From assembly GCF_006345805.1 (NCBI RefSeq), contig NW_021824069.1, forward strand, positions 1 to 19,796: DNA of 19,796 bases. The letters are read 5' to 3'. The notes below the pieces were generated by a model. It saw only the letters and a program-made list of their open reading frames with translations, was not told the origin of the DNA and made no database searches. Of the stretch, positions 702-19,796 are shown in pieces. Within the stretch, counting starts at the first letter, position 1, and each line of letters opens with the position of its first letter. The position numbers and the translations under genes were made by a program. This DNA comes from Octopus sinensis (lineage: Eukaryota).

Positions 702-868
702 GGGTAGAGGACATCAGCAACAGCAAACAACATGAAATACGAAAACAAATGTGTTAAATACACCAACAACCAGAGAAAGAAATGGAAAACAGGCCAAGTA
801 ACACAAAGAACGACCTTTTATCAGTTGTCGGCTGTCTATCTATTTCTCATTTCGAGCATTGTACGACA

Positions 869-870
<2 letters not shown>
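702..870 (-). mobile_element. Dispersed repeat fragment, possibly the terminal region of a Penelope-like element
   Basis: Aligns by eye with 7343-7515: gggtagaggacatc vs gggtacaggacacc, atgaaatacgaaaaca vs atgagaaacgaaaaca, tctatttctcatttcga vs tctattccacgtttcga. Family assignment is inference. Confidence 0.4.
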
Positions 871-911
<41 letters not shown>

Positions 912-1054
912 ATATAGAGGGCATAATTATACATACATGCCAGGAGGCATTATATATACCTGCCAAACGCTAAGAGGGACAATCAGTCATTTCTACCAAA
1001 AATATTTCTAATCCCACCGAATGCAACTTTTCAAAGTAAGACATTTAAAAATAT

Positions 1055-1102
1055 AGGCCTGTATCACAGTGATTTCATACTTACGTAATCATCAGCAGGC
1101 CT
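1055..1102 (-). ncRNA. Type I hammerhead ribozyme, unit 1 (matches the array consensus)
   Basis: Minus strand reads AGGCCUG-CUGAUGA-UUAC GUAA GUAU-GAAA-UCACUGUGAU-A-CAGGCCU. Stem I AGGCCUG/CAGGCCU is 7 perfect bp, stem III is AUCA/UGAU, and predicted cleavage follows AUA (between 1062 and 1061). Confidence 0.88.
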
Positions 1103-1539
1103 GAATGTATTATAAAAACAACGACCTTGCCTCGCTTAAGCCGAACAGCTAACTGATCAACATCAACGAAGCACATGGGTGAGTTTATATATATTACATC
1201 GGGTGAATGTGAATGACAAACTTTTACAAAATTGCATTTCGGGAGAAAAAAGTTTTTTCGGAATAAAAATTTTGCAATTAAGGACAACTACTAATAAGGA
1301 AAACTTAACAAGAAATTGTCAGGTAGATAGCGTTAAAAACCTCATAAGAGAAAAAATTTCGAAAATAATTATTTCTTATTGAACATATTAATTATATATA
1401 GAGGGCATAATTATACATACATGCCAGGAGGCATTATATATACCTGCCAAACGCTAAGAGGACAATCAGTCATTTCTACCAAAAATATTTCTAATCCCAC
1501 CGAATGCAACTTTTCAAAGTAAGACATTTAAAAATATAT

Positions 1540-1587
1540 AGGCCTGTATCACAGTGATTTCATACTTACGTAATCATCAGCAGGCCT
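1540..1587 (-). ncRNA. Type I hammerhead ribozyme, unit 2 (matches the array consensus)
   Basis: Same 48 nt as unit 1. Confidence 0.88.
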
Positions 1588-2016
1588 GAATGTATATAAA
1601 TAAACAACGACCTTGCCTCGCTTAAGCCGAACAGCTAACTGATCAACATCAACGAAGCACATGGGTGAGTTTATATATATTACATCCGGGTGAATGACAA
1701 ACTTTTACAAAATTGCATTTCGGGAGGAGGAAAGTTTTTTCGGAATAAAAATTTTGCAATTAAGGACAACTACTTAATAAGGAAAACTAACAAGAAATTG
1801 TCAGGTAGATAGCGTAAAAACCTCATAAGAGAAAAAATTTCGAAAATAATTATTTCTTATTGAACATATTAATTATATATAGAGGGCATAATATACATAC
1901 ATGCCAGGAGGCATTATATTACCTGCCAACGCTAAGAGGGACAATCAGTCATTCTACCAAAAATATTACTAATCCCACCGAATGCAACTTTTCAAAGTAA
2001 GACATTTAAAAATATA

Positions 2017-2064
2017 TGGCCTGTATCACAGTGATTTCATACTTACGTAATCATCAGCAGGCCT
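2017..2064 (-). ncRNA. Type I hammerhead ribozyme, unit 3 (outermost stem I pair lost)
   Basis: Plus strand reads tggcctg instead of aggcctg; core unchanged. Confidence 0.82.
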
Positions 2065-2503
2065 GAATGTATTATAAATAAACAACGACCCTTCCTCGCT
2101 TAAGCCGAACAGCTAACTGATCAACATCAACGAAGCACATGAGTGAGTTTATATATATTACATCCGGGTGAATGGCAAACTTTTACAAAATTGCATTTCG
2201 GGAGAGGAAAAGTTTTTTCGGAATAAAAATTTTGCAATTAAGGACAAACTATTAATAAGGAAAACTTACAACAAGAAATTGTCAGGTAGATAGCGTAAAA
2301 ACCTCATAAGAGAAAAAAAAATTTCGAAAATAATTATTTCTATTGAACATATTAATTATATAGAGGGCATAATTATACATACATGCCAGGAGGCATTATA
2401 TATATACCTGCCAAACGCTAAGAGGGACAATCAGTCATTTCTACCAAAAATATTACTAATCCCACCGAATGCAACTTTTCAAAGTAAGACATTTAAAAAT
2501 TAT

Positions 2504-2554
2504 AGGCCTGTATCACAGTGATTTCATACTTACGTAATCATCATCAGCAGGCCT
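2504..2554 (-). ncRNA. Type I hammerhead ribozyme, unit 4 (3-nt UGA insertion after CUGAUGA)
   Basis: Plus strand reads taatcatcatcagc versus consensus taatcatcagc. Confidence 0.7.
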
Positions 2555-2988
2555 GATGTATTATAAATAAACAACGACCTTGCCTCGCTTAAGCCGAAAA
2601 GCTAACTGATCAACATCAACGAAGCACATGAGTGAGTTTATATATATTACATCCGGGTGAATGGCAAACTTTTACAAAATTGCATTTCGGAGAGGAAAAG
2701 TTTTTTCGGAATAAAAATTTTGCAATTAAGGACACTACTTAATAAGGAAAACTTAACAAGAAATTGTCAGGTAGATAGCGTAAAAACCTCATAAGAGAAA
2801 AAATTTCGAAAATAATTATTTCTTATTGAACATATTAATTTATATATAGAGGGCATAATTATACATACATGCCAGGAGGCATTATATATTACCTGCCAAA
2901 CGCTAAGAGGGACAATCAGTCATTTTCTACCAAAAATATTACTAATCCCACGAATGCAACTTTTCAAAGTAAGACATTTAAATATTAT

Positions 2989-3035
2989 AGGCCTGTATCA
3001 CAGTGATTTCATACTTACGTAATCATCAGCAGGCC
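2989..3035 (-). ncRNA. Type I hammerhead ribozyme, unit 5 (outermost stem I base deleted)
   Basis: Plus strand reads caggccg instead of caggcctg; core unchanged. Confidence 0.82.
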
Positions 3036-3468
3036 GAATGTATTATAAATAAACAACGACCTTGCCTCGTAAGCCGAACAGCTAACTGATCAACATCAAC
3101 GAAGCACATGAGTGAGTTTATATATATTACATCCGGGTGAATGGCAAACTTTTACAAAATTGCATTTCGGGAGAGGAAAAGTGTTTTTCGGAATAAAAAT
3201 TTTGCAATTAAGGACAACTACTTAATAGGAAACTTAACAAGAATTGTCAGGTAGATAGCGTAAAAACCTCATAAGAGAAAAAATTCGAAAATAATTATTT
3301 CTTATTGAACATATTAATTTATATATAGAGGGCATAATTATACATACATGCCAGGAGCAATTATATATACCTGACCAAACGCTAAGAGGGACAATCAGTC
3401 ATTTCTACCAAAAATATTTCTAATCCCACCGAATGCAACTTTTCAAAGTAAGACATTTAAAAATATAT

Positions 3469-3516
3469 AGGCCTGTATCACAGTGATTTCATACTTACGT
3501 AATCATCAGCAGGCCT
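3469..3516 (-). ncRNA. Type I hammerhead ribozyme, unit 6 (matches the array consensus)
   Basis: Same 48 nt as unit 1. Confidence 0.88.
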
Positions 3517-3947
3517 GAATGTATTATAAATAAACAACGACCTTGCCTCGCTTAAGCCGAACAGCTAACTGATCAACATCAACGAAGCACATGGGTGAGT
3601 TTATATATATTACATCCGGGTGAATGGCAAACTTTTACAAAATTGCATTTCGGGAGAGGAAAAGTTTTTTCGGAATAAAAATTTTGCAATTAAGGACAAC
3701 TACTTAATAAGGAAAACTTAACAAGAAATTGTCAGGCGATAGCGTAAAAACCTCATAAGAGAAAAAATTTCGAAAATAATTATTTCTTATTGAACATATT
3801 AATTTATATATAGAGGGCATAATTATACATACATGCCAGGAGGCATTTATATACTGCCAAACGCTAAGAGGGACAATCAGTCATTTCTACAAAAATATTA
3901 CTAATCCCACCGAATGCAATTTTCAAAGTAAGACATTTAAAAAATAT

Positions 3948-3994
3948 AGGCCTGTATCACAGTGATTCATACTTACGTAATCATCAGCAGGCCT
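3948..3994 (-). ncRNA. Type I hammerhead ribozyme, unit 7 (one A of GAAA missing; core damaged or sequencing error)
   Basis: Plus strand reads gtgattcat versus consensus gtgatttcat. Confidence 0.65.
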
Positions 3995-4433
3995 GAATGT
4001 ATTATAAATAAACAACGACCTTGCCTCGCTTAAGCCGAACAGCTAACTGATCAACATCAACGAAGCACATGGGTGAGTTTATATATATTACATCCGGGTG
4101 AATGAATGGCAAACTTTTACAAAATTGCATTTCGGGAGAGGAAAAGTTTTTTCGGAATTAAAATTTTGCAATTAAGGACAACTACTTAATAAGGAAAACT
4201 TAACAAGAATTGTCAGGTAGATAGCGTAAAAACCTCATAAGAGAAAAAATTTCGAAAATAATTATTTCTTATTGAACATATTAATTTATATATAGAGGGC
4301 ATAATTATACATACATGCCAGGAGGCATTATATATACCTGCCAAACGCTAAGAGGGACAATCAGTCATTTCTACAAAAATATTACTAATCCCACCGAATG
4401 CAACTTTTCAAAGTAAGACATTTAAAAATATAT

Positions 4434-4481
4434 AGGCCTGTATCACAGTGATTTCATACTTACGTAATCATCAGCAGGCCT
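4434..4481 (-). ncRNA. Type I hammerhead ribozyme, unit 8 (matches the array consensus)
   Basis: Same 48 nt as unit 1. Confidence 0.88.
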
Positions 4482-4917
4482 GAATGTATTATAATAAACA
4501 ACGACCTTGCCTCGCTTAAGCCGAACAGCTAAACGAAAGCAACGATCCATCACGAAGCACATGGGTGAGTTTATATATATTACATCCGGGAATGGCAACT
4601 TTTACAAAATTGCATTTCGGGAGAGGAAAAGTTTTTTCGGAATAAAAATTTTGCAATTAAGGACAACTACTTAATAAGGAAAACTTAACAAGAAATTGTC
4701 AGGTAGATAGCGTAAAAACCTCATAAGAGAAAAAATTTCGAAAATAATTATTTCTTATTGAACATATTAATTTATATATAGGGCATAATTATACATACAT
4801 GCCAGGAGGCATTATATATACCTGCCAAACGCTAAGAGGGACAATCAGTCATTTCTACCAAAAATATTACTAATCCCACCGAATGCACTTTTCAAAGTAA
4901 GACATTTAAAAATATAT

Positions 4918-4965
4918 AGGCCTGTATCACAGTGATTTCATACTTACGTAATCATCAGCAGGCCT
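4918..4965 (-). ncRNA. Type I hammerhead ribozyme, unit 9 (matches the array consensus)
   Basis: Same 48 nt as unit 1. Confidence 0.88.
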
Positions 4966-5402
4966 GAATGTATTATAAATAAACAACGACCTTGCCTCGC
5001 TTAAGCCGAACAGCTAACTGATCAACATCAACGAAGCACATGGGTGAGTTTATATATATTACATCCGGGTGAATGGCAAACTTTTACAAAATTGCATTTC
5101 GGGAGAGGAAAAGTTTTTTTTGGAATAAAAATTTTGCAATTAAGGACACTACTTAATAAGGAAAACTTAACAAAAAATTGTCAGGTAGATAGCGTAAAAA
5201 CCTCATAAGAGAAAAAATTTCGAAAATAATTATTTCTTATTGAACATATTAATTTATATATAGAGGGCATAATTATACATACATGCCAGGAGGCATTATA
5301 TATACCTGCCAAACGCTAAGAGGGACAATCAGTCATTTCTACCAAAAATATTACTAATCCCACCGAATGCAACTTTTCAAAGTAAGACATTTAAAAATAT
5401 AT

Positions 5403-5451
5403 AGGCCTGTAATCACAGTGATTTCATACTTACGTAATCATCAGCAGGCCT
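5403..5451 (-). ncRNA. Type I hammerhead ribozyme, unit 10 (extra U at the cleavage site)
   Basis: Plus strand reads cctgtaatcac versus consensus cctgtatcac. Confidence 0.7.
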
Positions 5452-5769
5452 GAATGTATTATAAATAAACAACGACCTTGCCTCGCTTAAGCCGAACAGC
5501 TAACTGATCAACATCAACGAAGCACATGGGTGAGTTTATATATATTACATCCGGGTGAATGGCAAACTTTTACAAAATTGCATTTCGGGAGAGGAAAAGT
5601 TTTTTCGGAATAAAAATTTTGCAATTAAGGACAACTACTTAATAAGGAAAACTTAACAAGAAATTGTCAGGTAGATAGCGTAAAAACCTCATAAGAGAAA
5701 AAATTTCGAAAATAATTATTTCTTATTGAACATATTAATTTATATATAGAGGGCATAATTATACATACA

Positions 5770-6086
5770 TGCTGATGATTACGTAAGTATGAAATCACTG
5801 TGATACAGGCCTATATATTTTTAAATGTCTTACTTTGAAAAGTTGCATTCGGTGGGATTAGTAATATTTTTGGTAGAAATGACTGATTGTCCCTCTTAGC
5901 GTTTGGCAGGTATATATAATGCCTCCTGGCATGTATGTATAATTATGCCCTCTATATATAAATTAATATGTTCAATAAGAAAAACAATTATTTTCGAAAT
6001 TTTTCTCTTATGAGGTTTTTACGCTATCTACCTGACAATTTCTTGTTAGTTTTCCTTATTAAGTAGTTGTCCTTAATTGCAAAATT
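5770..6086 (+). repeat. Inverted partial copy of the array unit (317 bp), starting with a 5'-truncated hammerhead
   Basis: Reverse complement of the unit from tgctgatgattacg to gtccttaattgcaaaatt. Core CTGATGA...GAAA...ATA CAGGCCT lies at 5772-5812, but the 5' strand of stem I is missing. TGC microhomology at 5770-5772. Confidence 0.92.
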
Positions 6087-6259
6087 ATATATATTATATA
6101 TAATATATATATATAACAAGAGAGACAGAGACAGGCAGAAACAAGGAAATGGTCTCAAAGCACTGAAACCGGTATGAAATGTTCTTTATAAAATTATTTT
6201 AGCATTTTCTATCTTGACTTGTTTTTTCATATATATCAACTCGTGTGCTCCTTCTCATC

Positions 6260-6862: not shown

Positions 6863-6925
6863 GTTCTCTCTTCCGCTGATGAAAATATCACGTGGTATAT
6901 TTGAAAACTTGTACTTTTAGAGAAC
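6863..6925 (+). ncRNA. Degenerate hammerhead-like motif, unrelated in sequence to the array
   Basis: CTGATGA (6876-6882), 6-bp stem AAATAT/ATATTT, then GAAAAC-TT-GTA. Distal helix GTTCTCT/AGAGAAC. Proximal stem I is only 1 bp and there is an extra A in GAAAA. Confidence 0.35.
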
Positions 6926-10024: not shown

Positions 10025-10464
10025 AGAGGGTGAAGAAACTGTCGTCTCAATTACGCAAAAATTAATGTAACACTGACATCTCAATTTAGCAGATATATTT
10101 ACCCAAATTACATAAGAATATCTTGGAATACTAAAGAGTAAAGTTATTCAATAAAATCGCCATTGGCTTCAACCACAGCCTCCAGGAGACTTCAGAATCT
10201 CTTGCAACTCTTCTGGACGGTCTCTTTTAAGTTGTTGAATGCTGCCACAATACTTGCCTTCAGTTTCTCCTTGGTGTGACAAGGAGTCTTGTTGGTCTCT
10301 TGCTCAACTGCCCCCCACACAAAATAACTAAGGGGTATACAGCCTGGGGAATTATGTAGCCAGATTTTAGGGGTGATGTGGTCACAAAAATTGTCTGACA
10401 TCCATGACTGCGTTCTCCTGCTTGTGTGGCATGGTACCTAGTGCTGTTGCCAGAAATAGGATCT
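10025..10464 (-). mobile_element. Tc1/mariner DD37D (maT-like) transposon 3' remnant: transposase pseudogene (10144-10464) plus probable TIR near 10025
   Basis: Minus frame reads RSYFWQQH*VPCHTSRRTQSWMSDNFCDHITPKIWLHNSPGCIPLSYFVWGAVEQETNK...RF*SLLEAVVEANGDFIE*. This is a decayed WQQDSAPCH...WPPNSPDxNPLDY with 37 residues between the 2nd and 3rd Asp positions, both mutated. The element ends in TA-GAGGGTG. Confidence 0.88.
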
Positions 10465-10673
10465 ATCTACCTATCTATGCCGCTCTCTCAAATGAGCAAA
10501 TAGCACCATCTGGTGAGAGGAATTCGAATTGTAACTTGCTGTGTCTCTCTGTAGAAAACTACCATCCTATATTCTGCAAGAATACCCAGGAAGAATAATG
10601 AGATTTGATGAGATTTGTTATAAACAATCTCCAAGATAAAATATCTGCTAAAAATAGCTAGCATCCATTAGCG

Positions 10674-10741: not shown

Positions 10742-10889
10742 TGATGATGATAATGATGATGATGATAATGATGATGATAATAAAAATAATAATAATGATA
10801 AAATAATAATAATAATGATGATAATAATAATAATAATAATAATATAATAATAATAATAATAATAATAATATAATAATAATAATAATAAT
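10674..10889. repeat. (AAT)n/(GAT)n microsatellite
   Basis: Direct inspection; 5' flank of the R4/Dong copy. Confidence 0.95.
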
Positions 10890-11696
10890 ATAGAAATAGA
10901 CAAGAAAAATCCCAGCAATGGTTGAGAAGCTCAGGACTCAAAGCAGAAACAGAGGGATTTTTAATTGCAGCACAAGACCAAGCCTCCCCACCAGAAATTA
11001 CCAAAACATGTAATGAAAAGAAATATTACAAGTAACTGCAGAATATGTGGAGATGGACAAGAAACAATAATCATATTATCTCTAGCTGCCCAGTCCTGGC
11101 TAAGAAGGAATTATTCACAGACATGACAGAGTTGGAACCTACATACATTGGACTATGCCAACATTATGGAATAACACAGAAAAAAGATGGTATAGGCACA
11201 CACCAGAAAAGGTCACAGAAAACGAGAAAGCACCATACTCTGGGATATGCCGATACACACAGATAGAGAAATTAAGGCGAACAGACCAGATATAGTTGTC
11301 AGAGATCATGAAGAAAAAAATGCTTTCTAATGATGTATCAATACCGGCAGATGACAACGTGTCTCTAAAGAATGGAGAAACTCTCAAAATACAAAGACCT
11401 GGAAATAGAGGTAACTAGAATGTGGAACCTGAAAACAGAAACAATTCCTATCATAGTAGGTGCATTAGGCATGATAAAAAAATATTCAGACAAATACATA
11501 ACAAAAACACCAGGACTTACAAACACATATAACATACAGAAAATTGCACTACTAGGCACTGCACACATCCTACGCAGAACACTTTCCATACAATAACCAT
11601 CAAAGCATCACAACAAATCACAGCACATACCCAAGGCACACAGAGCTGCGCTCGGTAGTGAAGTGAAAGCACGCTATAAAAATAAAACTACTGAAT
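10890..11696 (+). mobile_element. 5'-truncated R4/Dong-clade non-LTR retrotransposon (zinc knuckle, REL endonuclease, 3' UTR), frameshifted
   Basis: Pieces across frames: WLRSSGLKAETEGFLIAAQDQSLPTRNY, CRICGDGQETI.HIISSCP (CCHC), ILWDMPIHTDREIKANRPDIVV, DVSIP (PD-D/ExK), EKLSKYKDL...IALLGTAHILRR*. Flanked on both sides by (AAT)n. Confidence 0.9.
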
Positions 11697-11892: not shown

Positions 11893-12079
11893 TTTGGGGG
11901 GCGGTGGCCAGTCGATTAGATCGACACTATTACGCGACTGGTACTTAATTTATCGATCCCGAAAGGATGAAAGACAAAGTCTATCTCGGCGAAATTTGAA
12001 CTCAGAACGTAAAAAGAGACGAAGTACCGCTAAGCATTTCGCCCGGCGTGTTAACGTTTCTGCGAGCACACCACCTTTT
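11891..12079 (-). mobile_element. tRNA-derived SINE (octopus-type)
   Basis: Minus strand has an A-box-like head, B box GAGTTCAAATT, central CTTTCATCCTTTCGGGATCGATAAATTAAGTACCAG and an (ATT)n tail. Homologous to 15920-16152. Confidence 0.85.
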
Positions 12080-12160: not shown

Positions 12161-12367
12161 TCATTTCAAATTTTGGTACGAGGCTAGCAAGCCCAGGGAA
12201 GCGAGTAAATCGATTAGATCGACCCTAGCCCTCAAAATGGTACCTATTTTTTTTTTAGACCCAGAAAGGATAAACGCGCGAAGTCGACTTCGGCGGAATT
12301 TGAATTCAGACGCTCGGAAAGCCGCTCTGCGTTTCGCTTCTTTCTGCTGACGATTCTACCATCTCGC
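12161..12367 (-). mobile_element. tRNA-derived SINE, diverged copy
   Basis: Minus strand has TGGTAGAATCG (A box), GAATTCAAATTCCGCCGAAGTCGACTT, the central domain and tail CCTCGTACCAAAATTTGAAA. Confidence 0.78.
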
Positions 12368-14691: not shown

Positions 14692-14713
14692 CTATTATCA
14701 TTATTATTATTAC

Positions 14714-14762
<49 letters not shown>

Positions 14763-14917
14763 TTTACTATTATTATTATTATTGTTATTATTGTTGTTGT
14801 TGTTGTTGTTATTATTATTATTATCATTATTATTATTATTAATATCCTTATTATTATTATTAATATTATTATTATTATTATTATTATCATCATCATCATC
14901 ATCATTATTATTATTAC

Positions 14918-14953
<36 letters not shown>

Positions 14954-15175
14954 TACTATCATTATTATTATTACTATTATTATTATTATTATTATTACTA
15001 TTACTATTATTACTATTATTATTATTATTATCATCATCATTATTATCATTATTATTATCATCATCATCATCATCATTATTATCATTATTATTATGATTAT
15101 TATTATTATTATTATTAATCTTCTTTTTCTTCTTCTTGTTTTTCTTATTATTATTATTAATATTTATTATTATTG
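14692..15175. repeat. Long (ATT)n/(ATC)n/(GTT)n compound microsatellite
   Basis: Direct inspection; source of the poly-I, poly-L and poly-M ORFs. Confidence 0.95.
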
Positions 15176-15919: not shown

Positions 15920-16152
15920 AAGGTGGAGAGCTGGCAAAAACGTTAGCACGCCGGGCGAAATGCGTAGCCGTATTTCGTCGGCCGCTGCGTTCTGAGTTCA
16001 AATTCCGCCGAGGTCGACTTTGCCTTTCATCCTTTCGGGGTCGATTAAATAAGTACCAGTTACGCACTTGAGTCGATATAATCGACTTAATCCGTTTGTC
16101 TGCCCTTGTTTGTCCTCTCCGTGTTGAGCCCCTTGTGGGTAGTAAAGAAATA
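15920..16152 (+). mobile_element. tRNA-derived SINE, full length
   Basis: AGCTGGCAAAAACG (A box), GAGTTCAAATTCC (B box), GTCGACTTTGCCTTTCATCCTTTCGGGGTCGAT central domain, tail ending CCCCTTGTGGGTAGTAAAGAAATA. Confidence 0.88.
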
Positions 16153-16189: not shown

Positions 16190-16420
16190 ATTCCTCCCTG
16201 TTCTTGTGATATCTTGTATCCCTGCCGTAGGGCTTCATTTCCACACACGCCGACTTAATTTATTTCGTCCTTAGTCGAAAGACACCTGTTGTTATGTCCT
16301 GTTATTATTTTTATTGTAATTGTGTAACATTGTTCGTTTTTCCCGTCCTTGTTTTTGTATACATTCGTTGCTTTCTTCCAAGGAATCTAATGTTCTTAGC
16401 TTGGTTTTTCCTTGGGGCTC
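16190..16420. repeat. Probable dispersed repeat fragment abutting the LINE relic
   Basis: Pyrimidine-rich non-coding segment that truncates the LINE at 16421. Family and left boundary not established. Confidence 0.25.
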
Positions 16421-17660
16421 TAATCTGGATAGATTAACTCCAGATCTCTCAGTAGTTCCGCGTAGGTATTCTGTTTTTCACTGATCTTCAGCTTTCTGTT
16501 AACATCCGCTGAGCAGCTGATTTGCACAACAGTACACAGCCTCTCTTCTCTATTCTAAATCATTATACAAGGTCCGCTGTGCTTACATTTTCTCGAGGTC
16601 TTCACTGGGACATTCCACTTGTACTCTTTTTTTATTATGAGCGCCTATTGCTTCTACCATACTGTGGGTTCTTATTTCTTTGTCCTCGGTGTTATCCTTC
16701 CGACGGATTTCATTAGAGACTGTCCTAGCTACAGCATCATGTCTCATCGGTAGATAAACGGTAATGACATTTTCTGACAACTACTTGTAATGTGGAAGAT
16801 ATCTTCGATGTTAACTCCCCAAAGTCTGCAATATATTGCCAGATTTTACTGATTTTCCTGCATCTCTATCACTTTTCTCTCCAGCAGGTTTTGGTTGATA
16901 ATACCTGCTGGGAGGTAGTAATCCGTCTATTGGTTCATGATAGACTGCATTTATGATCAATGTTATTCTCATCTCGGAGCTTTCTACTAACATATCCATA
17001 CATAATCTTCTACTCATATATGCTCATCCTTTAATCTGATGATACGTTGCTGGAGAGTCGTGGAACTTCCTTGGGCATGTATTCTAGGTTATCAGACAAG
17101 GAATGTTGCTCAAGTTTCTGCCCCCCACGTTTTATGATGTTTTCAGCCTCATATATGCAAATTTAGTCAAGGGATGTATTTCGTCGCTTGGTTGTTAAAA
17201 AATCTTGTCGAAAAGATACGATACGATATTCAAAGGCATTTTGGATCGATGTTAAGCGTCAGCCATCTTGTTTTCGTTTTAGGTAGAGTAGTCTACGTCA
17301 CCGTTTATGTGCAAATTATGTGTGCTTGTTAGTATTTTTCGGGTTTCCATATTAATGGCTCGGATCTCATCGAGAGCCCAATCAAGCAGCCCAAATATGG
17401 GTATGAGTACTAGCACTGAAAACACATTGTGGGCCACTGTTTTATTGAATGCAGAGAGGTCTGAAGCCCAAATTTTCTTTATTCGGCTGTAATATTCTTT
17501 AGTGATATATTTTTTGTTACAGGTGCCATTGTAAGTTACGCTTTCATCCACCCCTATATACCTGTAACATTCCTCGTCTGACTCGTCTGATACAGGGGAA
17601 ACCGTCATGTTATTGATGGAGATGTTGCTAGTCTAGTTTACAGTTTTCCCTTCTCACAAC
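16421..17660 (-). mobile_element. Decayed R4/Dong-like non-LTR retrotransposon fragment, second subfamily (end of RT, thumb, zinc knuckle, REL endonuclease)
   Basis: ECYRYIG (RT motif 7), YYSRIKKIWASDLSAFNKTVAHNVF, CRLWGVNIEDIFHITSSC (decayed CCHC), YLPMRHDAVA, LCTVVQISCSADVN..KISEKQNTYAELLRDL. Many stops and frameshifts. Confidence 0.85.
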
Positions 17661-17956: not shown

Positions 17957-18600
17957 TGCATATATATATACACACGTAAACATATGTGTATAATTATATA
18001 TCTGTTTATATCTTTACATGTACATACGCACACACGCACACAAACACTCACCATATGTATGTATGTATATATGTATTTATATATATTATAGTATATATTA
18101 TATATATGATATTAAAAAATATATTAGTATTTTATTATATATATATATATAGATATATATATATTATATATATATATACATACATATATATATTATATAT
18201 ACTATTATTAGATTATATATTATATATATATATATATATACAGAGAGAGAGAGAGAGATACTGATATATATATATGCACATACAATAGGACACTCGCACA
18301 CACTCGCACAAATACATGTTTATATATACATCCGCATACGTTGAATATCACAGAGGTTATCATGAAAAATGTGTGGTTCACAGCTAGATTTTAGAAGATA
18401 GAAGAGTCGATGCAGTATGGGGCAACATTATCTAGGATGTCCCAAGTTAGCATAAACACCAAATAAAAAACAGAAAAATAGGGTCAGCTGATAGCAAGGT
18501 CATTTTTTGCCGTTGACCTTTACCAGGCCTACGTAGCCTCTTTCTCTCTCGGTCTCTCTTTCTGTCCCTCTCACTCGCCCCTATTCGCTCTCTCTCTCTC

Positions 18601-18672
18601 TCCATCTCTCTCCCTCTTTGTCTCTCCATCTCTCTCCCTCTTTGTCTCTCCATCTCTCTCCCTCTTTGTCTC
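18601..18672. repeat. 24-bp CT-rich minisatellite, 3 copies
   Basis: TCCATCTCTCTCCCTCTTTGTCTC repeated three times within a (CT)n tract. Confidence 0.85.
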
Positions 18673-19397
18673 TCTCTCTCTCTCTCAGAAGTCACTCTGT
18701 CTTCCTCATTCTTTCACTGTTTTGTACGCATGTCCTATGATCGTTTATTAAAATGTATCTCCTTCTCACTCACAATCGCTTTCTGTTTCACTTAGTCAGT
18801 ATAAGTGTCTTTCTCTTTCTCTCTCTGTCTCTGTCTCTCTCTCATCTTTACCCTTCATCCTACCACTGTTTTGTCCATTCTTATCTCTGATTCACTATGT
18901 ATTAAAAATGTCTTCCTCTCAAACTCTCTTCTGTCTCTGCCTCTCAAACCTCGTAAATATATATATATATATATATATATATTCTCCTAACTCTTCCTAA
19001 CTCTTCCTTACACACACACAGAGTGTCTATCTATCTCTCTTACTGTCTTTCTCGTACCTACTGTTTTAATCATTATCTAAACTCATTGTTTAAACTTTTT
19101 TCTTTACAGAAATTTCTTAATATCTTTTCTGGTGACGTCGAGGTTTTCTTTTTTATCCCCTTTTCTTATTCTTTTCTTCTTTGAGTTCATCTCCGCCATT
19201 CTCCCCGAATACAGTTGCCTACGCACCCATAAAATATATATAAATATATCTACGTCAGTTTTGCGTATTTATGTATTTGCGTTCTACGTATATATATATA
19301 TATATATATATATAGTGTGTAAAGTGTATGTGTGGTATGTGTGTATATAAACTTATATTTATATTCGTATATATCCGTATCTACTTCAATCCTCTTT

Positions 19398-19532: not shown

Positions 19533-19796
19533 GCAATGACACCTTTATCTGACATGCTCAACAGAACTGAATATGGATGCAACTGTTATAGCCATGCAAT
19601 CAGCCATCTCTTGTAAATGGATGATCTAAAACTGTATGCTGCAAATGGTAAACAGGTGGAAACATTATTTCAGACAATACATGGATTTGCCAGCGAAATA
19701 AACCCTAAAGAATATCAACAGAAAAAAGACGGTATATGCATATCCGAGAAAATGTCACAGTAAATGAGAAAGCAACCATATTCTGGGATATGCCAA
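19533..19796 (+). mobile_element. R4/Dong-like LINE fragment with RT catalytic motif joined directly to the endonuclease region; runs off the window end
   Basis: AMTPLSDMLNRTEYG...ISHLL*MDDLKLYAAN (YMDD with TAA at 19614-19616). 19711-19796 aligns with about 11171-11255 (ILWDMP region). Confidence 0.82.

What the first reader, a model, noticed from the sequence alone, without database searches (positions are those of the whole stretch)
904..5772. Ten-copy tandem array of type I hammerhead ribozymes: candidate cephalopod retrozyme producing ~483-nt circular RNA
Seen: every ~483-bp unit carries, on the minus strand, a 7-bp stem I flanking CUGAUGA, a hairpin, GAAA, a hairpin and AUA. Five copies match the consensus exactly and two differ only at the outermost stem I pair. 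Known: non-coding tandem repeats with one type I hammerhead per unit define metazoan non-LTR retrozymes (newt satellite 2, schistosome SMalpha, cnidarian retrozymes), which self-cleave to monomers and circularise. Inference: this is such an element. The unit is longer than the roughly 170-400 nt I recall for described metazoan cases, and I do not recognise the family.
Basis: partly seen in the sequence, partly recalled or inferred. Interest (0 to 1): 0.92.

Follow-up and report, generated by a model that had tools for sequence, protein, structure and literature searches.

The report
Octopus hammerhead-ribozyme tandem repeat (retrozyme)
A roughly 4.9-kb tandem repeat in an octopus-like genome carries one self-cleaving hammerhead ribozyme motif per 485-bp unit, which makes it a likely new member of the known animal "retrozyme" class of circular-RNA mobile elements and interesting but not surprising.

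Summary
Window 899-5772 is a 10.1-copy tandem array with a 485-bp consensus unit. Each of ten positions on the minus strand carries a type I hammerhead motif: AGGCCUG / CUGAUGA / 3-bp helix II with a GUAA loop / GAAA / 4-bp helix III / A^ / CAGGCCU. Five copies are exact, two lose only the outer stem I pair, and three have core or spacing lesions.

Chance is unlikely, at about 1e-5 or less expected per unit. Independent features fit a non-LTR retrozyme:
- There is no ORF longer than 44 codons, and GC is 33%.
- The circular monomer fold is strongly stable and strand-specific (z = -5.8).
- New here: an inverted 5'-truncated copy (5769-6086) lies head-to-head with the array, and both outer ends sit in (TA)n. 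This is the insertion signature described for Penelope-like elements.

Caveats:
- No Rfam hammerhead model reaches threshold (best is HH9, 17.3 bits against 52).
- Helix II is weak, with a U.U pair at its base.
- The monomer's minimum-energy fold is not the hammerhead, but a dimer folds as a double hammerhead.
- No relatives or RNA data could be reached.

The host is an octopod (89% identity to an Octopus bimaculoides ORF). The unit length is not exceptional, since published families span 51-972 bp. Verdict: new member of a known kind, with activity untested.

The parts
899..5772 (-). Tandem array of the 485-bp unit. In consensus coordinates (1 = first nt after the cleavage site) it reads, 5'->3' on the minus strand: partial unit 124-484 (5772-5412), nine full units (5409-1062), partial unit 1-164 (1061-899).
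   Evidence: TRF; unit dissection; blastn of the consensus against the window
5403..5451 (-). Hammerhead copy 1, 49 nt. An extra U precedes A17 (GAUUA), so the cleavage-site register is disturbed.
4918..4965 (-). Hammerhead copy 2, 48 nt, exact consensus. Predicted cleavage is between 4925 (A17) and 4924 (C1.1).
4434..4481 (-). Hammerhead copy 3, exact consensus
3948..3994 (-). Hammerhead copy 4. It has GAA instead of GAAA, a one-A deletion in the core that is probably inactivating if real.
3469..3516 (-). Hammerhead copy 5, exact consensus
2989..3035 (-). Hammerhead copy 6. The outermost stem I pair is lost (5' A missing); the core is intact.
2504..2554 (-). Hammerhead copy 7. A 3-nt GAU insertion lies between A9 and helix II.
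2017..2064 (-). Hammerhead copy 8. The outermost stem I pair is lost (3' U replaced by A through a 1-nt deletion); the core is intact.
1540..1587 (-). Hammerhead copy 9, exact consensus
1055..1102 (-). Hammerhead copy 10, exact consensus
5769..6086 (+). Inverted, 5'-truncated partial unit (consensus positions about 444-485, then 1-281), joined head-to-head to the 5' end of the array through a 3-nt microhomology (TGC at 5769-5771). It lacks most of the 5' strand of stem I, so its hammerhead is incomplete. It is 100% identical over 179 nt to the nearest array unit.
   Evidence: (I1)
869..916 (.). (TA)n microsatellite abutting the 3' end of the array
6084..6112 (.). (TA)n-type microsatellite abutting the 3' end of the inverted copy

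Best explanation
The array is a non-LTR retrozyme of an octopod genome: a non-coding, non-autonomous retroelement whose 485-nt unit carries one type I hammerhead ribozyme on the minus strand. The inferred mechanism follows. The array is transcribed as a multimer from the minus strand. Each hammerhead cleaves after A17 (...GUGAUA^CAGGCC...) and releases 485-nt monomers with 5'-OH and 2',3'-cyclic phosphate ends. Helix II is weak (3 bp above a U.U pair) and the helix III hairpin is quasi-palindromic, so cleavage probably works best when two hammerheads of a multimer pair as a double hammerhead with a 10-bp helix III. A host RtcB-type tRNA ligase then closes the monomer into a highly self-paired circle. 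This genomic copy was probably made by target-primed, rolling-circle reverse transcription of such an RNA by a Penelope-like element (PLE) enzyme at a (TA)n site. Priming on both DNA strands would leave the inverted 5'-truncated copy at the 5' end. Shown here: the array, the motif and its completeness, its improbability by chance, the lack of coding capacity, the strand-specific predicted structure, the inverted copy, the microsatellite flanks and the octopod host. Inferred: transcription, cleavage, dimer action, circularisation and PLE-mediated insertion.
For: The array and its ten motifs are confirmed. All hammerhead core positions are present: C3-A9 = CUGAUGA, G12-A14 = GAA, an A15.1-U16.1 pair and H17 = A. 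Helix I is 7 bp, helix II 3 bp with a GUAA loop, and helix III 4 bp. Infernal aligns the whole motif to a hammerhead model (HH9) with every element in register, and this is the best-scoring family in a local scan. The chance expectation is about 1e-5 or less per unit. No frame is open beyond 44 codons, and GC is 33%. The circular monomer of the ribozyme strand folds at -122.9 kcal/mol against -89.3 +/- 5.8 for shuffles (z = -5.8). The opposite strand folds at -95.0 (z = -3.2). All nine genomic units show the same 20-29 kcal/mol strand asymmetry, and the consensus is more stable than any single unit. The dimer MFE is exactly the double-hammerhead fold at -33.7 kcal/mol, against 2 x -13.0 for monomers. 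A U.U pair at the base of helix II has a precedent in axolotl HHR_Amex2, which cleaved 22% in 1 h as a monomer and much better in dimeric constructs (PMC7229834). The locus architecture matches published PLE insertion signatures. [quoted passage not shown] A purified PLE protein nicks and extends both DNA strands and prefers AT-rich DNA (PMC11167929). Here the 5'-truncated array and the 5'-truncated inverted copy meet head-to-head with a 3-nt microhomology, and both 3' ends lie in (TA)n. Retrozymes are reported to co-occur with PLEs and to be related to PLE pLTRs (10.64898/2026.07.22.740005). PLEs are reported in cephalopod genomes (PMC8557442, PMC6962438).
Against: No Rfam hammerhead family reaches its gathering score, or even E<=10 over the array region. 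The HH9 match is 17.3 bits against a 52-bit cut-off. Positions 10.1/11.1 are U.U instead of the usual G-C, and helix II has only three pairs. For the isolated 48-mer the hammerhead fold (-11.0) is 2 kcal/mol worse than an alternative in which UGAU of the core pairs with AUCA of helix III. Three of the ten copies carry lesions in the core or its spacing. The hammerhead is not less variable than the rest of the unit: 9 variant cells in 441 against 109 in 3924. There is therefore no sign of selection, and no covariation is available. Eleven variant columns are shared, mostly by neighbouring units, so part of the array's history is DNA-level duplication. No related sequence was found anywhere I could search, so dispersal, copy number and conservation are unknown. 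No RNA data were available. No PLE reverse transcriptase lies in the window.
Confidence: 0.7

Rival explanations
1. The array is retrozyme-derived but now inert. The element originated from a hammerhead retroelement, but this array is a decaying satellite maintained and expanded by DNA-level unequal exchange. Its ribozyme is too weak or too damaged to yield circular RNA today.
For: Three of the ten copies have core or spacing lesions. Variants are shared between neighbouring units. The hammerhead is no better conserved than the rest of the unit. Helix II is weak with a U.U pair, the monomer MFE is a non-hammerhead fold, and the motif is sub-threshold in Rfam.
Against: Seven of the ten copies keep an intact core. 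Units are 96.5-99.2% identical to the consensus. Two-thirds of the differences are 1-nt indels, 42 of 70 of them homopolymer-length changes that may be long-read errors. The consensus keeps an unusually stable strand-specific fold.
Confidence: 0.18
2. The array is an ordinary satellite DNA in which a hammerhead-like string arose by chance and was copied along with the unit.
For: There is no Rfam hit at threshold. No homologues are available to show conservation. A partial CUGAUGA-hairpin-GAAA string with no helix III or helix I also occurs by chance at 6876 (+).
Against: The full motif with a 7-bp Watson-Crick stem I is expected about 1e-5 times or fewer per unit. It lies on the same strand that has the exceptional RNA fold. 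The locus also has a retroelement-type architecture.
Confidence: 0.05
3. The array is a piece of an autonomous Penelope-like element: tandem pseudo-LTRs with their hammerheads, rather than a separate non-autonomous element.
For: PLE pLTRs carry type I hammerheads, occur in tandem with inverted 5'-truncated copies, and target (TA)n (PMC8557442, PMC4209133).
Against: There are ten consecutive units with no reverse transcriptase or GIY-YIG ORF inside or next to the array. Published PLE hammerheads are described as minimal variants (PMC7229834), and from my own recollection of that literature they have a very short helix III, whereas helix III here has 4 bp.
Confidence: 0.05
4. The motif is a box C/D snoRNA-like gene repeated in tandem.
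For: There are weak matches to snoZ7 and snoR77Y (19.8 and 15.9 bits), driven by UGAUGA, which is also the box C consensus.
Against: Those scores are far below the gathering cut-offs of 43 and 52 bits. No CUGA box D lies next to the terminal stem (the sequence reads CUGU). The hammerhead alignment explains all the conserved elements, and the snoRNA alignment does not.
Confidence: 0.01

Closest known systems
Non-LTR retrozymes of invertebrates, e.g. Mytilus galloprovincialis (about 350-390 bp) and Acropora millepora (220-240 bp) (Cervera & de la Pena 2020, PMC7229834)
   Same: Both are AT-rich, non-coding tandem repeats with one type I hammerhead per unit and a highly self-paired predicted monomer. 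The mussel ribozymes also lack the archetypal loop 1-loop 2 nucleotides.
   Different: The unit is longer (485 bp). No sequence comparison with published retrozyme units could be made, because none was available to the tools, so similarity is untested. Helix II has a U.U base pair. Expression, cleavage and circularity are shown for those families and not for this one.
Axolotl retrozyme Rtz_353 with HHR_Amex2 (PMC7229834)
   Same: Both have a U.U mismatch at the base of helix II and a helix III more stable than in the newt type. In axolotl, monomers cleave poorly and dimeric constructs cleave far better. Here the dimer MFE is the double hammerhead.
   Different: That family is from a vertebrate host with a 350-bp unit and a 2-bp helix III capped by a tetraloop. 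Here helix III has 4 bp and a CUG triloop. Dimer action here is only a thermodynamic prediction.
Newt satellite 2 and Schistosoma SM-alpha hammerhead repeats
   Same: These are the classical tandem or dispersed repeats with type I hammerheads that are transcribed and self-cleave to unit length. The newt ribozyme acts as a double hammerhead.
   Different: Sequence, unit size and helix dimensions differ. Those hammerheads were used to build the Rfam Hammerhead_1 model, whereas this one scores below every Rfam threshold.
Hammerheads in pseudo-LTRs of Penelope-like elements (Cervera & de la Pena 2014, PMC4209133; Craig et al. 2021, PMC8557442; Frangieh et al. 2024, PMC11167929)
   Same: Both have a type I hammerhead, a tandem arrangement, an inverted 5'-truncated copy at the 5' end and (TA)n or AT-rich targets.
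   Different: There is no RT/GIY-YIG ORF here. PLE hammerheads are described as minimal variants, whereas helix III here is a 4-bp stem with a triloop.
Plant LTR retrozymes (PMC4918200)
   Same: The proposed life cycle is the same: hammerhead self-cleavage, circular RNA, then reverse transcription by an autonomous element.
   Different: The plant elements have type III hammerheads inside LTRs, a PBS and PPT, 600-1000-nt circles and probable Gypsy mobilisation. None of these is seen here.

Membership tests
Hammerhead ribozyme, type I | Conserved catalytic core: C3 U4 G5 A6 N7 G8 A9, G12 A13 A14, an A15.1-U16.1 pair, and H17 (not G) at the cleavage site | tested here: met
   CUGAUGA ... GAAA ... 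U A^ is present in 7 of 10 copies without a lesion. Infernal places every core position in register with HH9.
Hammerhead ribozyme, type I | Three helices around the core, with helix I open-ended (5' and 3' ends in helix I) | tested here: met
   Helix I is 7 Watson-Crick bp. Helix II is 3 bp plus a GUAA loop above a U.U pair. Helix III is 4 bp plus a CUG loop. Helix II is at the weak end and lacks the usual G10.1-C11.1 pair.
Hammerhead ribozyme, type I | Score at or above the Rfam gathering threshold for a hammerhead model (RF00163, RF02275, RF02277 and others) | tested here: not met
   There are no matches at gathering score or at E<=10 over the 5.1-kb array region, window 800-5900. The best is HH9 at 17.3 bits against 52 in a 91-nt scan.
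Hammerhead ribozyme, type I | Helices supported by covariation among homologues | not testable with these tools
   Only near-identical copies within one array are available, and no relatives were found.
Hammerhead ribozyme, type I | The hammerhead fold is thermodynamically accessible | tested here: inconclusive
   In the monomer the hammerhead fold is -11.0 kcal/mol against an MFE of -13.0 for a competing fold. In the dimer the MFE is the double hammerhead at -33.7.
Hammerhead ribozyme, type I | Mg2+-dependent site-specific self-cleavage | not testable with these tools
   This needs in vitro transcription of monomer and dimer constructs.
Metazoan non-LTR retrozyme | Short tandem repeats, dimers to large multimers, with one type I hammerhead per unit | tested here: met
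   There are 10.1 copies of a 485-bp unit, each with one motif. The length lies within the 51-972 bp reported for family consensuses.
Metazoan non-LTR retrozyme | Low GC (<45-50%), no LTR/PBS/PPT, no coding capacity | tested here: met
   GC is 33%. The longest stop-free frame in a consensus trimer is 44 codons. No unit ORF has relatives; the single hit is a spurious summed match to a VWD-repeat protein.
Metazoan non-LTR retrozyme | Monomeric circular RNA predicted to be stable and highly self-paired | tested here: met
   The MFE is -122.9 kcal/mol with 63% of bases paired and z = -5.8 against dinucleotide shuffles. The effect is strand-specific in all nine units.
Metazoan non-LTR retrozyme | Many dispersed loci in the genome, showing mobility, with target-site duplications when visible | not testable with these tools
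   No cephalopod genome is searchable here. At this locus both ends lie in (TA)n, so a duplication cannot be read.
Metazoan non-LTR retrozyme | Expressed as linear and circular unit-length RNAs | not testable with these tools
   No transcriptome data are accessible.
Metazoan non-LTR retrozyme | Co-existence with Penelope-like elements in the host genome | not tested
   This rests on literature only. PLEs (Naiad remnants, Penelope) are reported in Octopus spp. and the giant squid. No PLE ORF lies in this window.

The most novel reading that the evidence does not exclude
This would be the first characterised cephalopod retrozyme family. Its hammerhead is invisible to Rfam and would work only as a double hammerhead. 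This particular insertion would preserve an intact 'twin-primed' rolling-circle integration product: an array plus a head-to-head 5'-truncated inverted copy, with a 3-nt microhomology and both 3' ends in a (TA)n target. Under this reading it would be direct structural evidence that retrozyme circular RNAs are integrated by the Penelope-like RT/GIY-YIG machinery, which nicks and extends both DNA strands.
Probability: 0.25. Interest if true: 0.6.

Novelty: new member of a known kind. Interest (0 to 1): 0.4.

Why it matters
Retrozymes are the only known ribozyme-based route to abundant circular RNAs in animals, and how they are mobilised is still inferred rather than shown. An octopod family would extend the class to cephalopods. 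In the papers I could search, cephalopod hammerheads appear only as an Rfam count in the giant squid genome. The case also shows that model-based annotation misses some of these ribozymes. The architecture of this locus bears on the proposed link between retrozymes and Penelope-like elements. None of this would overturn current views; it adds a case and a testable insertion model.

Tried and rejected
(1) Rfam at gathering thresholds on the whole window and at E<=10 on the array region gave no hammerhead hit. Only a 91-nt scan brought up HH9 at 17.3 bits. The weak mir-297, snoZ7 and snoR77Y matches come from the (TA)n tract and from UGAUGA, and I rejected them.

(2) I looked for relatives in several ways, and all failed.
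- A degenerate hammerhead pattern returned 0 hits in metagenome, viral and prokaryotic genome contigs.
- A second pattern from the GC-richest part of the unit returned 0 hits in metagenomes.
- An exact look-up of ten unit ORFs found none in the collection.
- A word-index search with an alignment of ORFs running into the hammerhead gave no hit.
- A full HMMER search with the longest unit ORF gave one hit, a 2443-aa VWD-repeat protein matched by summed weak repeats. I judged it spurious.

(3) I tried to identify the host through the 109-aa ORF at 17279-17608 and got no hits, probably because of the length filter. The 74-aa ORF at 11372-11596 worked.

(4) Pfam scans of 17 neighbouring reading frames gave nothing significant. 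My reading of mariner-like and LINE/RT-like remnants therefore rests on inspection and only.

(5) A test for purifying selection on the hammerhead within the array showed no difference from the rest of the unit and has no power at this identity level.

(6) The CUGAUGA-hairpin-GAAA string at 6876 (+) has no helix III or helix I and is at chance level.

(7) ARAGORN found no tRNA-like sequences.

Full report
**Observation**

Tandem Repeats Finder reports a single array at 899-5772 with period 486, 10.1 copies, 95% matches and 3% indels. On the minus strand CUGAUGA occurs ten times at roughly 485-nt spacing, and nowhere else on that strand of the window. Each occurrence lies in the 48-nt context AGGCCUG CUGAUGA UUACGUAAGUAU GAAA UCACUGUGAU A CAGGCCU.

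Read as a type I hammerhead, the motif has these parts:
- Helix I has 7 Watson-Crick pairs.
- The core strand C3-A9 is complete.
- Helix II has three pairs (UAC/GUA) under a GUAA tetraloop and above a U.U pair at positions 10.1/11.1.
- G12-A14 is present.
- Helix III has four pairs (AUCA/UGAU) and a CUG loop.
- A17 is the cleavage nucleotide.

Five copies are exact. Two lose only the outermost helix I pair. Three carry lesions: an extra U before A17, GAA instead of GAAA, and a GAU insertion after A9. Units cut at the predicted cleavage site are 477-487 nt, and the majority consensus is 485 nt.

**Chance**

I used a deliberately relaxed descriptor: CUGANGA, helix II of at least 3 bp with one mismatch allowed at its base, GAAA, helix III of at least 3 bp, UH, and hairpins up to 40 nt. 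It matched 73-120 times in 40 Mb of first-order Markov sequence with the composition of the unit or of the window. Only one of those matches had a helix I of 4 bp or more. That gives about 1e-5 or fewer expected matches per 485-bp unit on both strands. A multi-gigabase genome would still contain a handful of chance matches. What matters is that this motif sits in a tandem repeat, on the strand with an exceptional RNA fold.

**Rfam**

No family reaches its gathering score on the window. No hammerhead family reaches E<=10 on the 5.1-kb array region, window 800-5900. When only 91 nt around one copy are scanned, the best family is Hammerhead_HH9 at 17.3 bits against a gathering score of 52. In that alignment helix I, CUGAUGA, helix II, GAAA, helix III and the cleavage nucleotide are all in register. 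So the motif has hammerhead topology but lies outside what the curated models accept. The causes are a short helix I without the model's inner segment, a short helix II and the U.U pair.

**Other properties of the unit**

GC is 33%. The longest stop-free frame in a consensus trimer, in any of six frames, is 44 codons, and none of the accidental ORFs has relatives.

Folded as a circle, the ribozyme-strand monomer has an MFE of -122.9 kcal/mol with 63% of bases paired. Two hundred dinucleotide shuffles give -89.3 +/- 5.8, so z = -5.8. The complementary RNA gives -95.0 against -74.5 +/- 6.4, so z = -3.2. All nine genomic units show the same asymmetry, -110 to -120 on the ribozyme strand against -87 to -97 on the other. 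The consensus is more stable than any individual unit. This is the "highly self-paired" monomer described for retrozymes (PMC7229834), and it lies on the same strand as the ribozyme.

The ribozyme strand has five runs of five or more T per unit. My inference is that RNA polymerase III is an unlikely source of multimeric transcripts.

**Is the ribozyme likely to work?**

For the isolated 48-mer the hammerhead fold (-11.0 kcal/mol) is less stable than an alternative (-13.0) in which UGAU of the core pairs with AUCA of helix III. Two copies folded together have as their MFE exactly the double hammerhead. In that fold helix I forms between the molecules, helix II forms within each, and helix III extends to 10 bp around a central U.U pair, at -33.7 kcal/mol against -26.0 for two monomers. 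Any short-loop hairpin favours a duplex in such a calculation, so this is modest support.

It does match published behaviour. Axolotl HHR_Amex2 also has a U.U pair at the base of helix II. It cleaved only 22% in one hour as a monomer and much more efficiently in dimeric constructs (PMC7229834). I therefore predict dimer-dependent cleavage.

**Variation within the array**

Of 118 variant cells, 78 are indels. Forty-two of the 70 indel columns are homopolymer-length changes, so part of the divergence may be long-read error, including two of the three hammerhead lesions. Ninety-four variant columns are singletons. Eleven are shared, mostly by neighbouring units, so the array was not simply laid down as identical copies that then diverged independently. 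Some DNA-level duplication or exchange has occurred. The hammerhead is not less variable than the rest of the unit (2.0% against 2.8% of cells), and the test has no power at this identity level.

**New finding: the locus architecture**

The array does not simply end at 5772. In consensus coordinates the minus-strand array starts at unit position 124 (5772), runs through nine full units, and ends at position 164 (899). From 5769 to 6086 the plus strand carries an inverted copy running from position about 444 through the cleavage-site junction to position 281. The two 5'-truncated ends meet head-to-head with a 3-nt microhomology (TGC). The inverted copy is 100% identical over 179 nt to the nearest array unit (I1). 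Both outward-facing 3' ends abut (TA)n tracts at 869-916 and 6084-6112.

This is the pattern described for Penelope-like element insertions. [quoted passage not shown] A purified PLE protein cleaves and extends both DNA strands and prefers AT-rich DNA (PMC11167929). This offers a mechanism for two convergent cDNAs.

Retrozymes have been proposed to be mobilised by PLEs (PMC7229834) and to be related to PLE pseudo-LTRs (10.64898/2026.07.22.740005). The locus is therefore consistent with an RNA-mediated, PLE-type insertion. A DNA-level fold-back duplication cannot be excluded.

**Host and surroundings**

The window is AT-rich and dense with microsatellites (41 TRF rows). The ORF at 11372-11596 (+) is 89% identical over its full length to Octopus bimaculoides A0A0L8I0U5. 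The following hits drop to about 68% and include crustacean and insect proteins. It looks like the 3' end of a widespread invertebrate retroelement ORF. This supports an octopod origin.

No Pfam domain was found in 17 neighbouring frames, and no PLE reverse transcriptase lies in the window. A roughly 170-bp repeat occurs in inverted orientation at 11910-12077 and 15920-16087 (83% complementary, I4).

**Comparison with what is known**

The element works like, and passes every in silico criterion of, the metazoan non-LTR retrozymes (PMC7229834). The criteria that need a genome or RNA could not be tested: dispersal, expression, circularity and cleavage.

The unit length is not a novelty. Tandem repeats of 150-450 bp were cited in 2020, and family consensuses of 51-972 bp were reported in 2026.

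In the searchable literature I found no description of retrozymes in cephalopods. The giant squid genome paper lists 235 Rfam "hammerhead 1" loci without further analysis (PMC6962438), so hammerheads as such are known in the class.

**Verdict**

This is a well-supported new member of a known kind. I put 0.70 on the full reading (a retrozyme whose ribozyme is probably competent) and a further 0.18 on the same origin with a now-inert array. Interest is moderate. The points of value are a hammerhead variant that escapes Rfam, the predicted dimer dependence, and an insertion architecture that bears on the retrozyme-PLE link.

Noticed in passing
window 5769-6086 (+): An inverted, 5'-truncated partial unit is joined head-to-head to the array with a 3-nt microhomology (TGC). 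It is 100% identical over 179 nt to the adjacent unit. It is now part of the main explanation.
   Followed up: yes
window 10889-11600 (+): A decayed 3' end of a retroelement ORF. The 74-aa frame at 11372-11596 is 89% identical to an Octopus bimaculoides uncharacterised protein, with 184 relatives across invertebrate assemblies. Upstream frames contain a CxxC...H-type knuckle. There is no Pfam match.
   Followed up: partly
window 11910-12077, 15920-16087 and about 12200-12350: Copies of a roughly 170-bp dispersed repeat, two of them inverted and 83% complementary. Each lies next to a (TAA)n or (TA)n tract. It is possibly a SINE or MITE-like element.
   Followed up: no
window 16400-17632 (-) and 19617-19760 (+): Several stop-interrupted frames in a region of higher GC (about 40%). 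By eye they resemble retrotransposon ORF remnants, for example an MDDLKLYA string reminiscent of the RT YxDD box. There were no Pfam hits, and the word-index search with the 109-aa frame found nothing.
   Followed up: partly
window 10195-10466 (-): The frame resembles, by eye only, the C-terminal part of a mariner/Tc1-type transposase. There is no Pfam match.
   Followed up: partly
window 6876-6905 (+): CUGAUGA followed by a 6-bp hairpin and GAAA, but with no helix III or helix I. It is at chance level for this composition and is not a hammerhead.
   Followed up: yes
window 4495-4535 (-), unit 4924-4441: One unit has a locally rearranged patch (GTGATGGATCGTTGCTTTCGTT instead of GTTGATGTTGATCAGTT), unlike the 1-nt indels that make up most of the variation.
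   Followed up: no
whole window: Microsatellite density is extreme (41 TRF rows), including (TA)n, (TAA)n, (ATCT)n, (TAT)160 at 14693-15174 and CT-rich arrays at 18538-18842.
   Followed up: no
P0121: The only full-library HMMER hit to a unit ORF is a 2443-aa protein with von Willebrand D-type repeats, matched through seven summed weak stretches. It is a repeat-driven false positive.
   Followed up: yes
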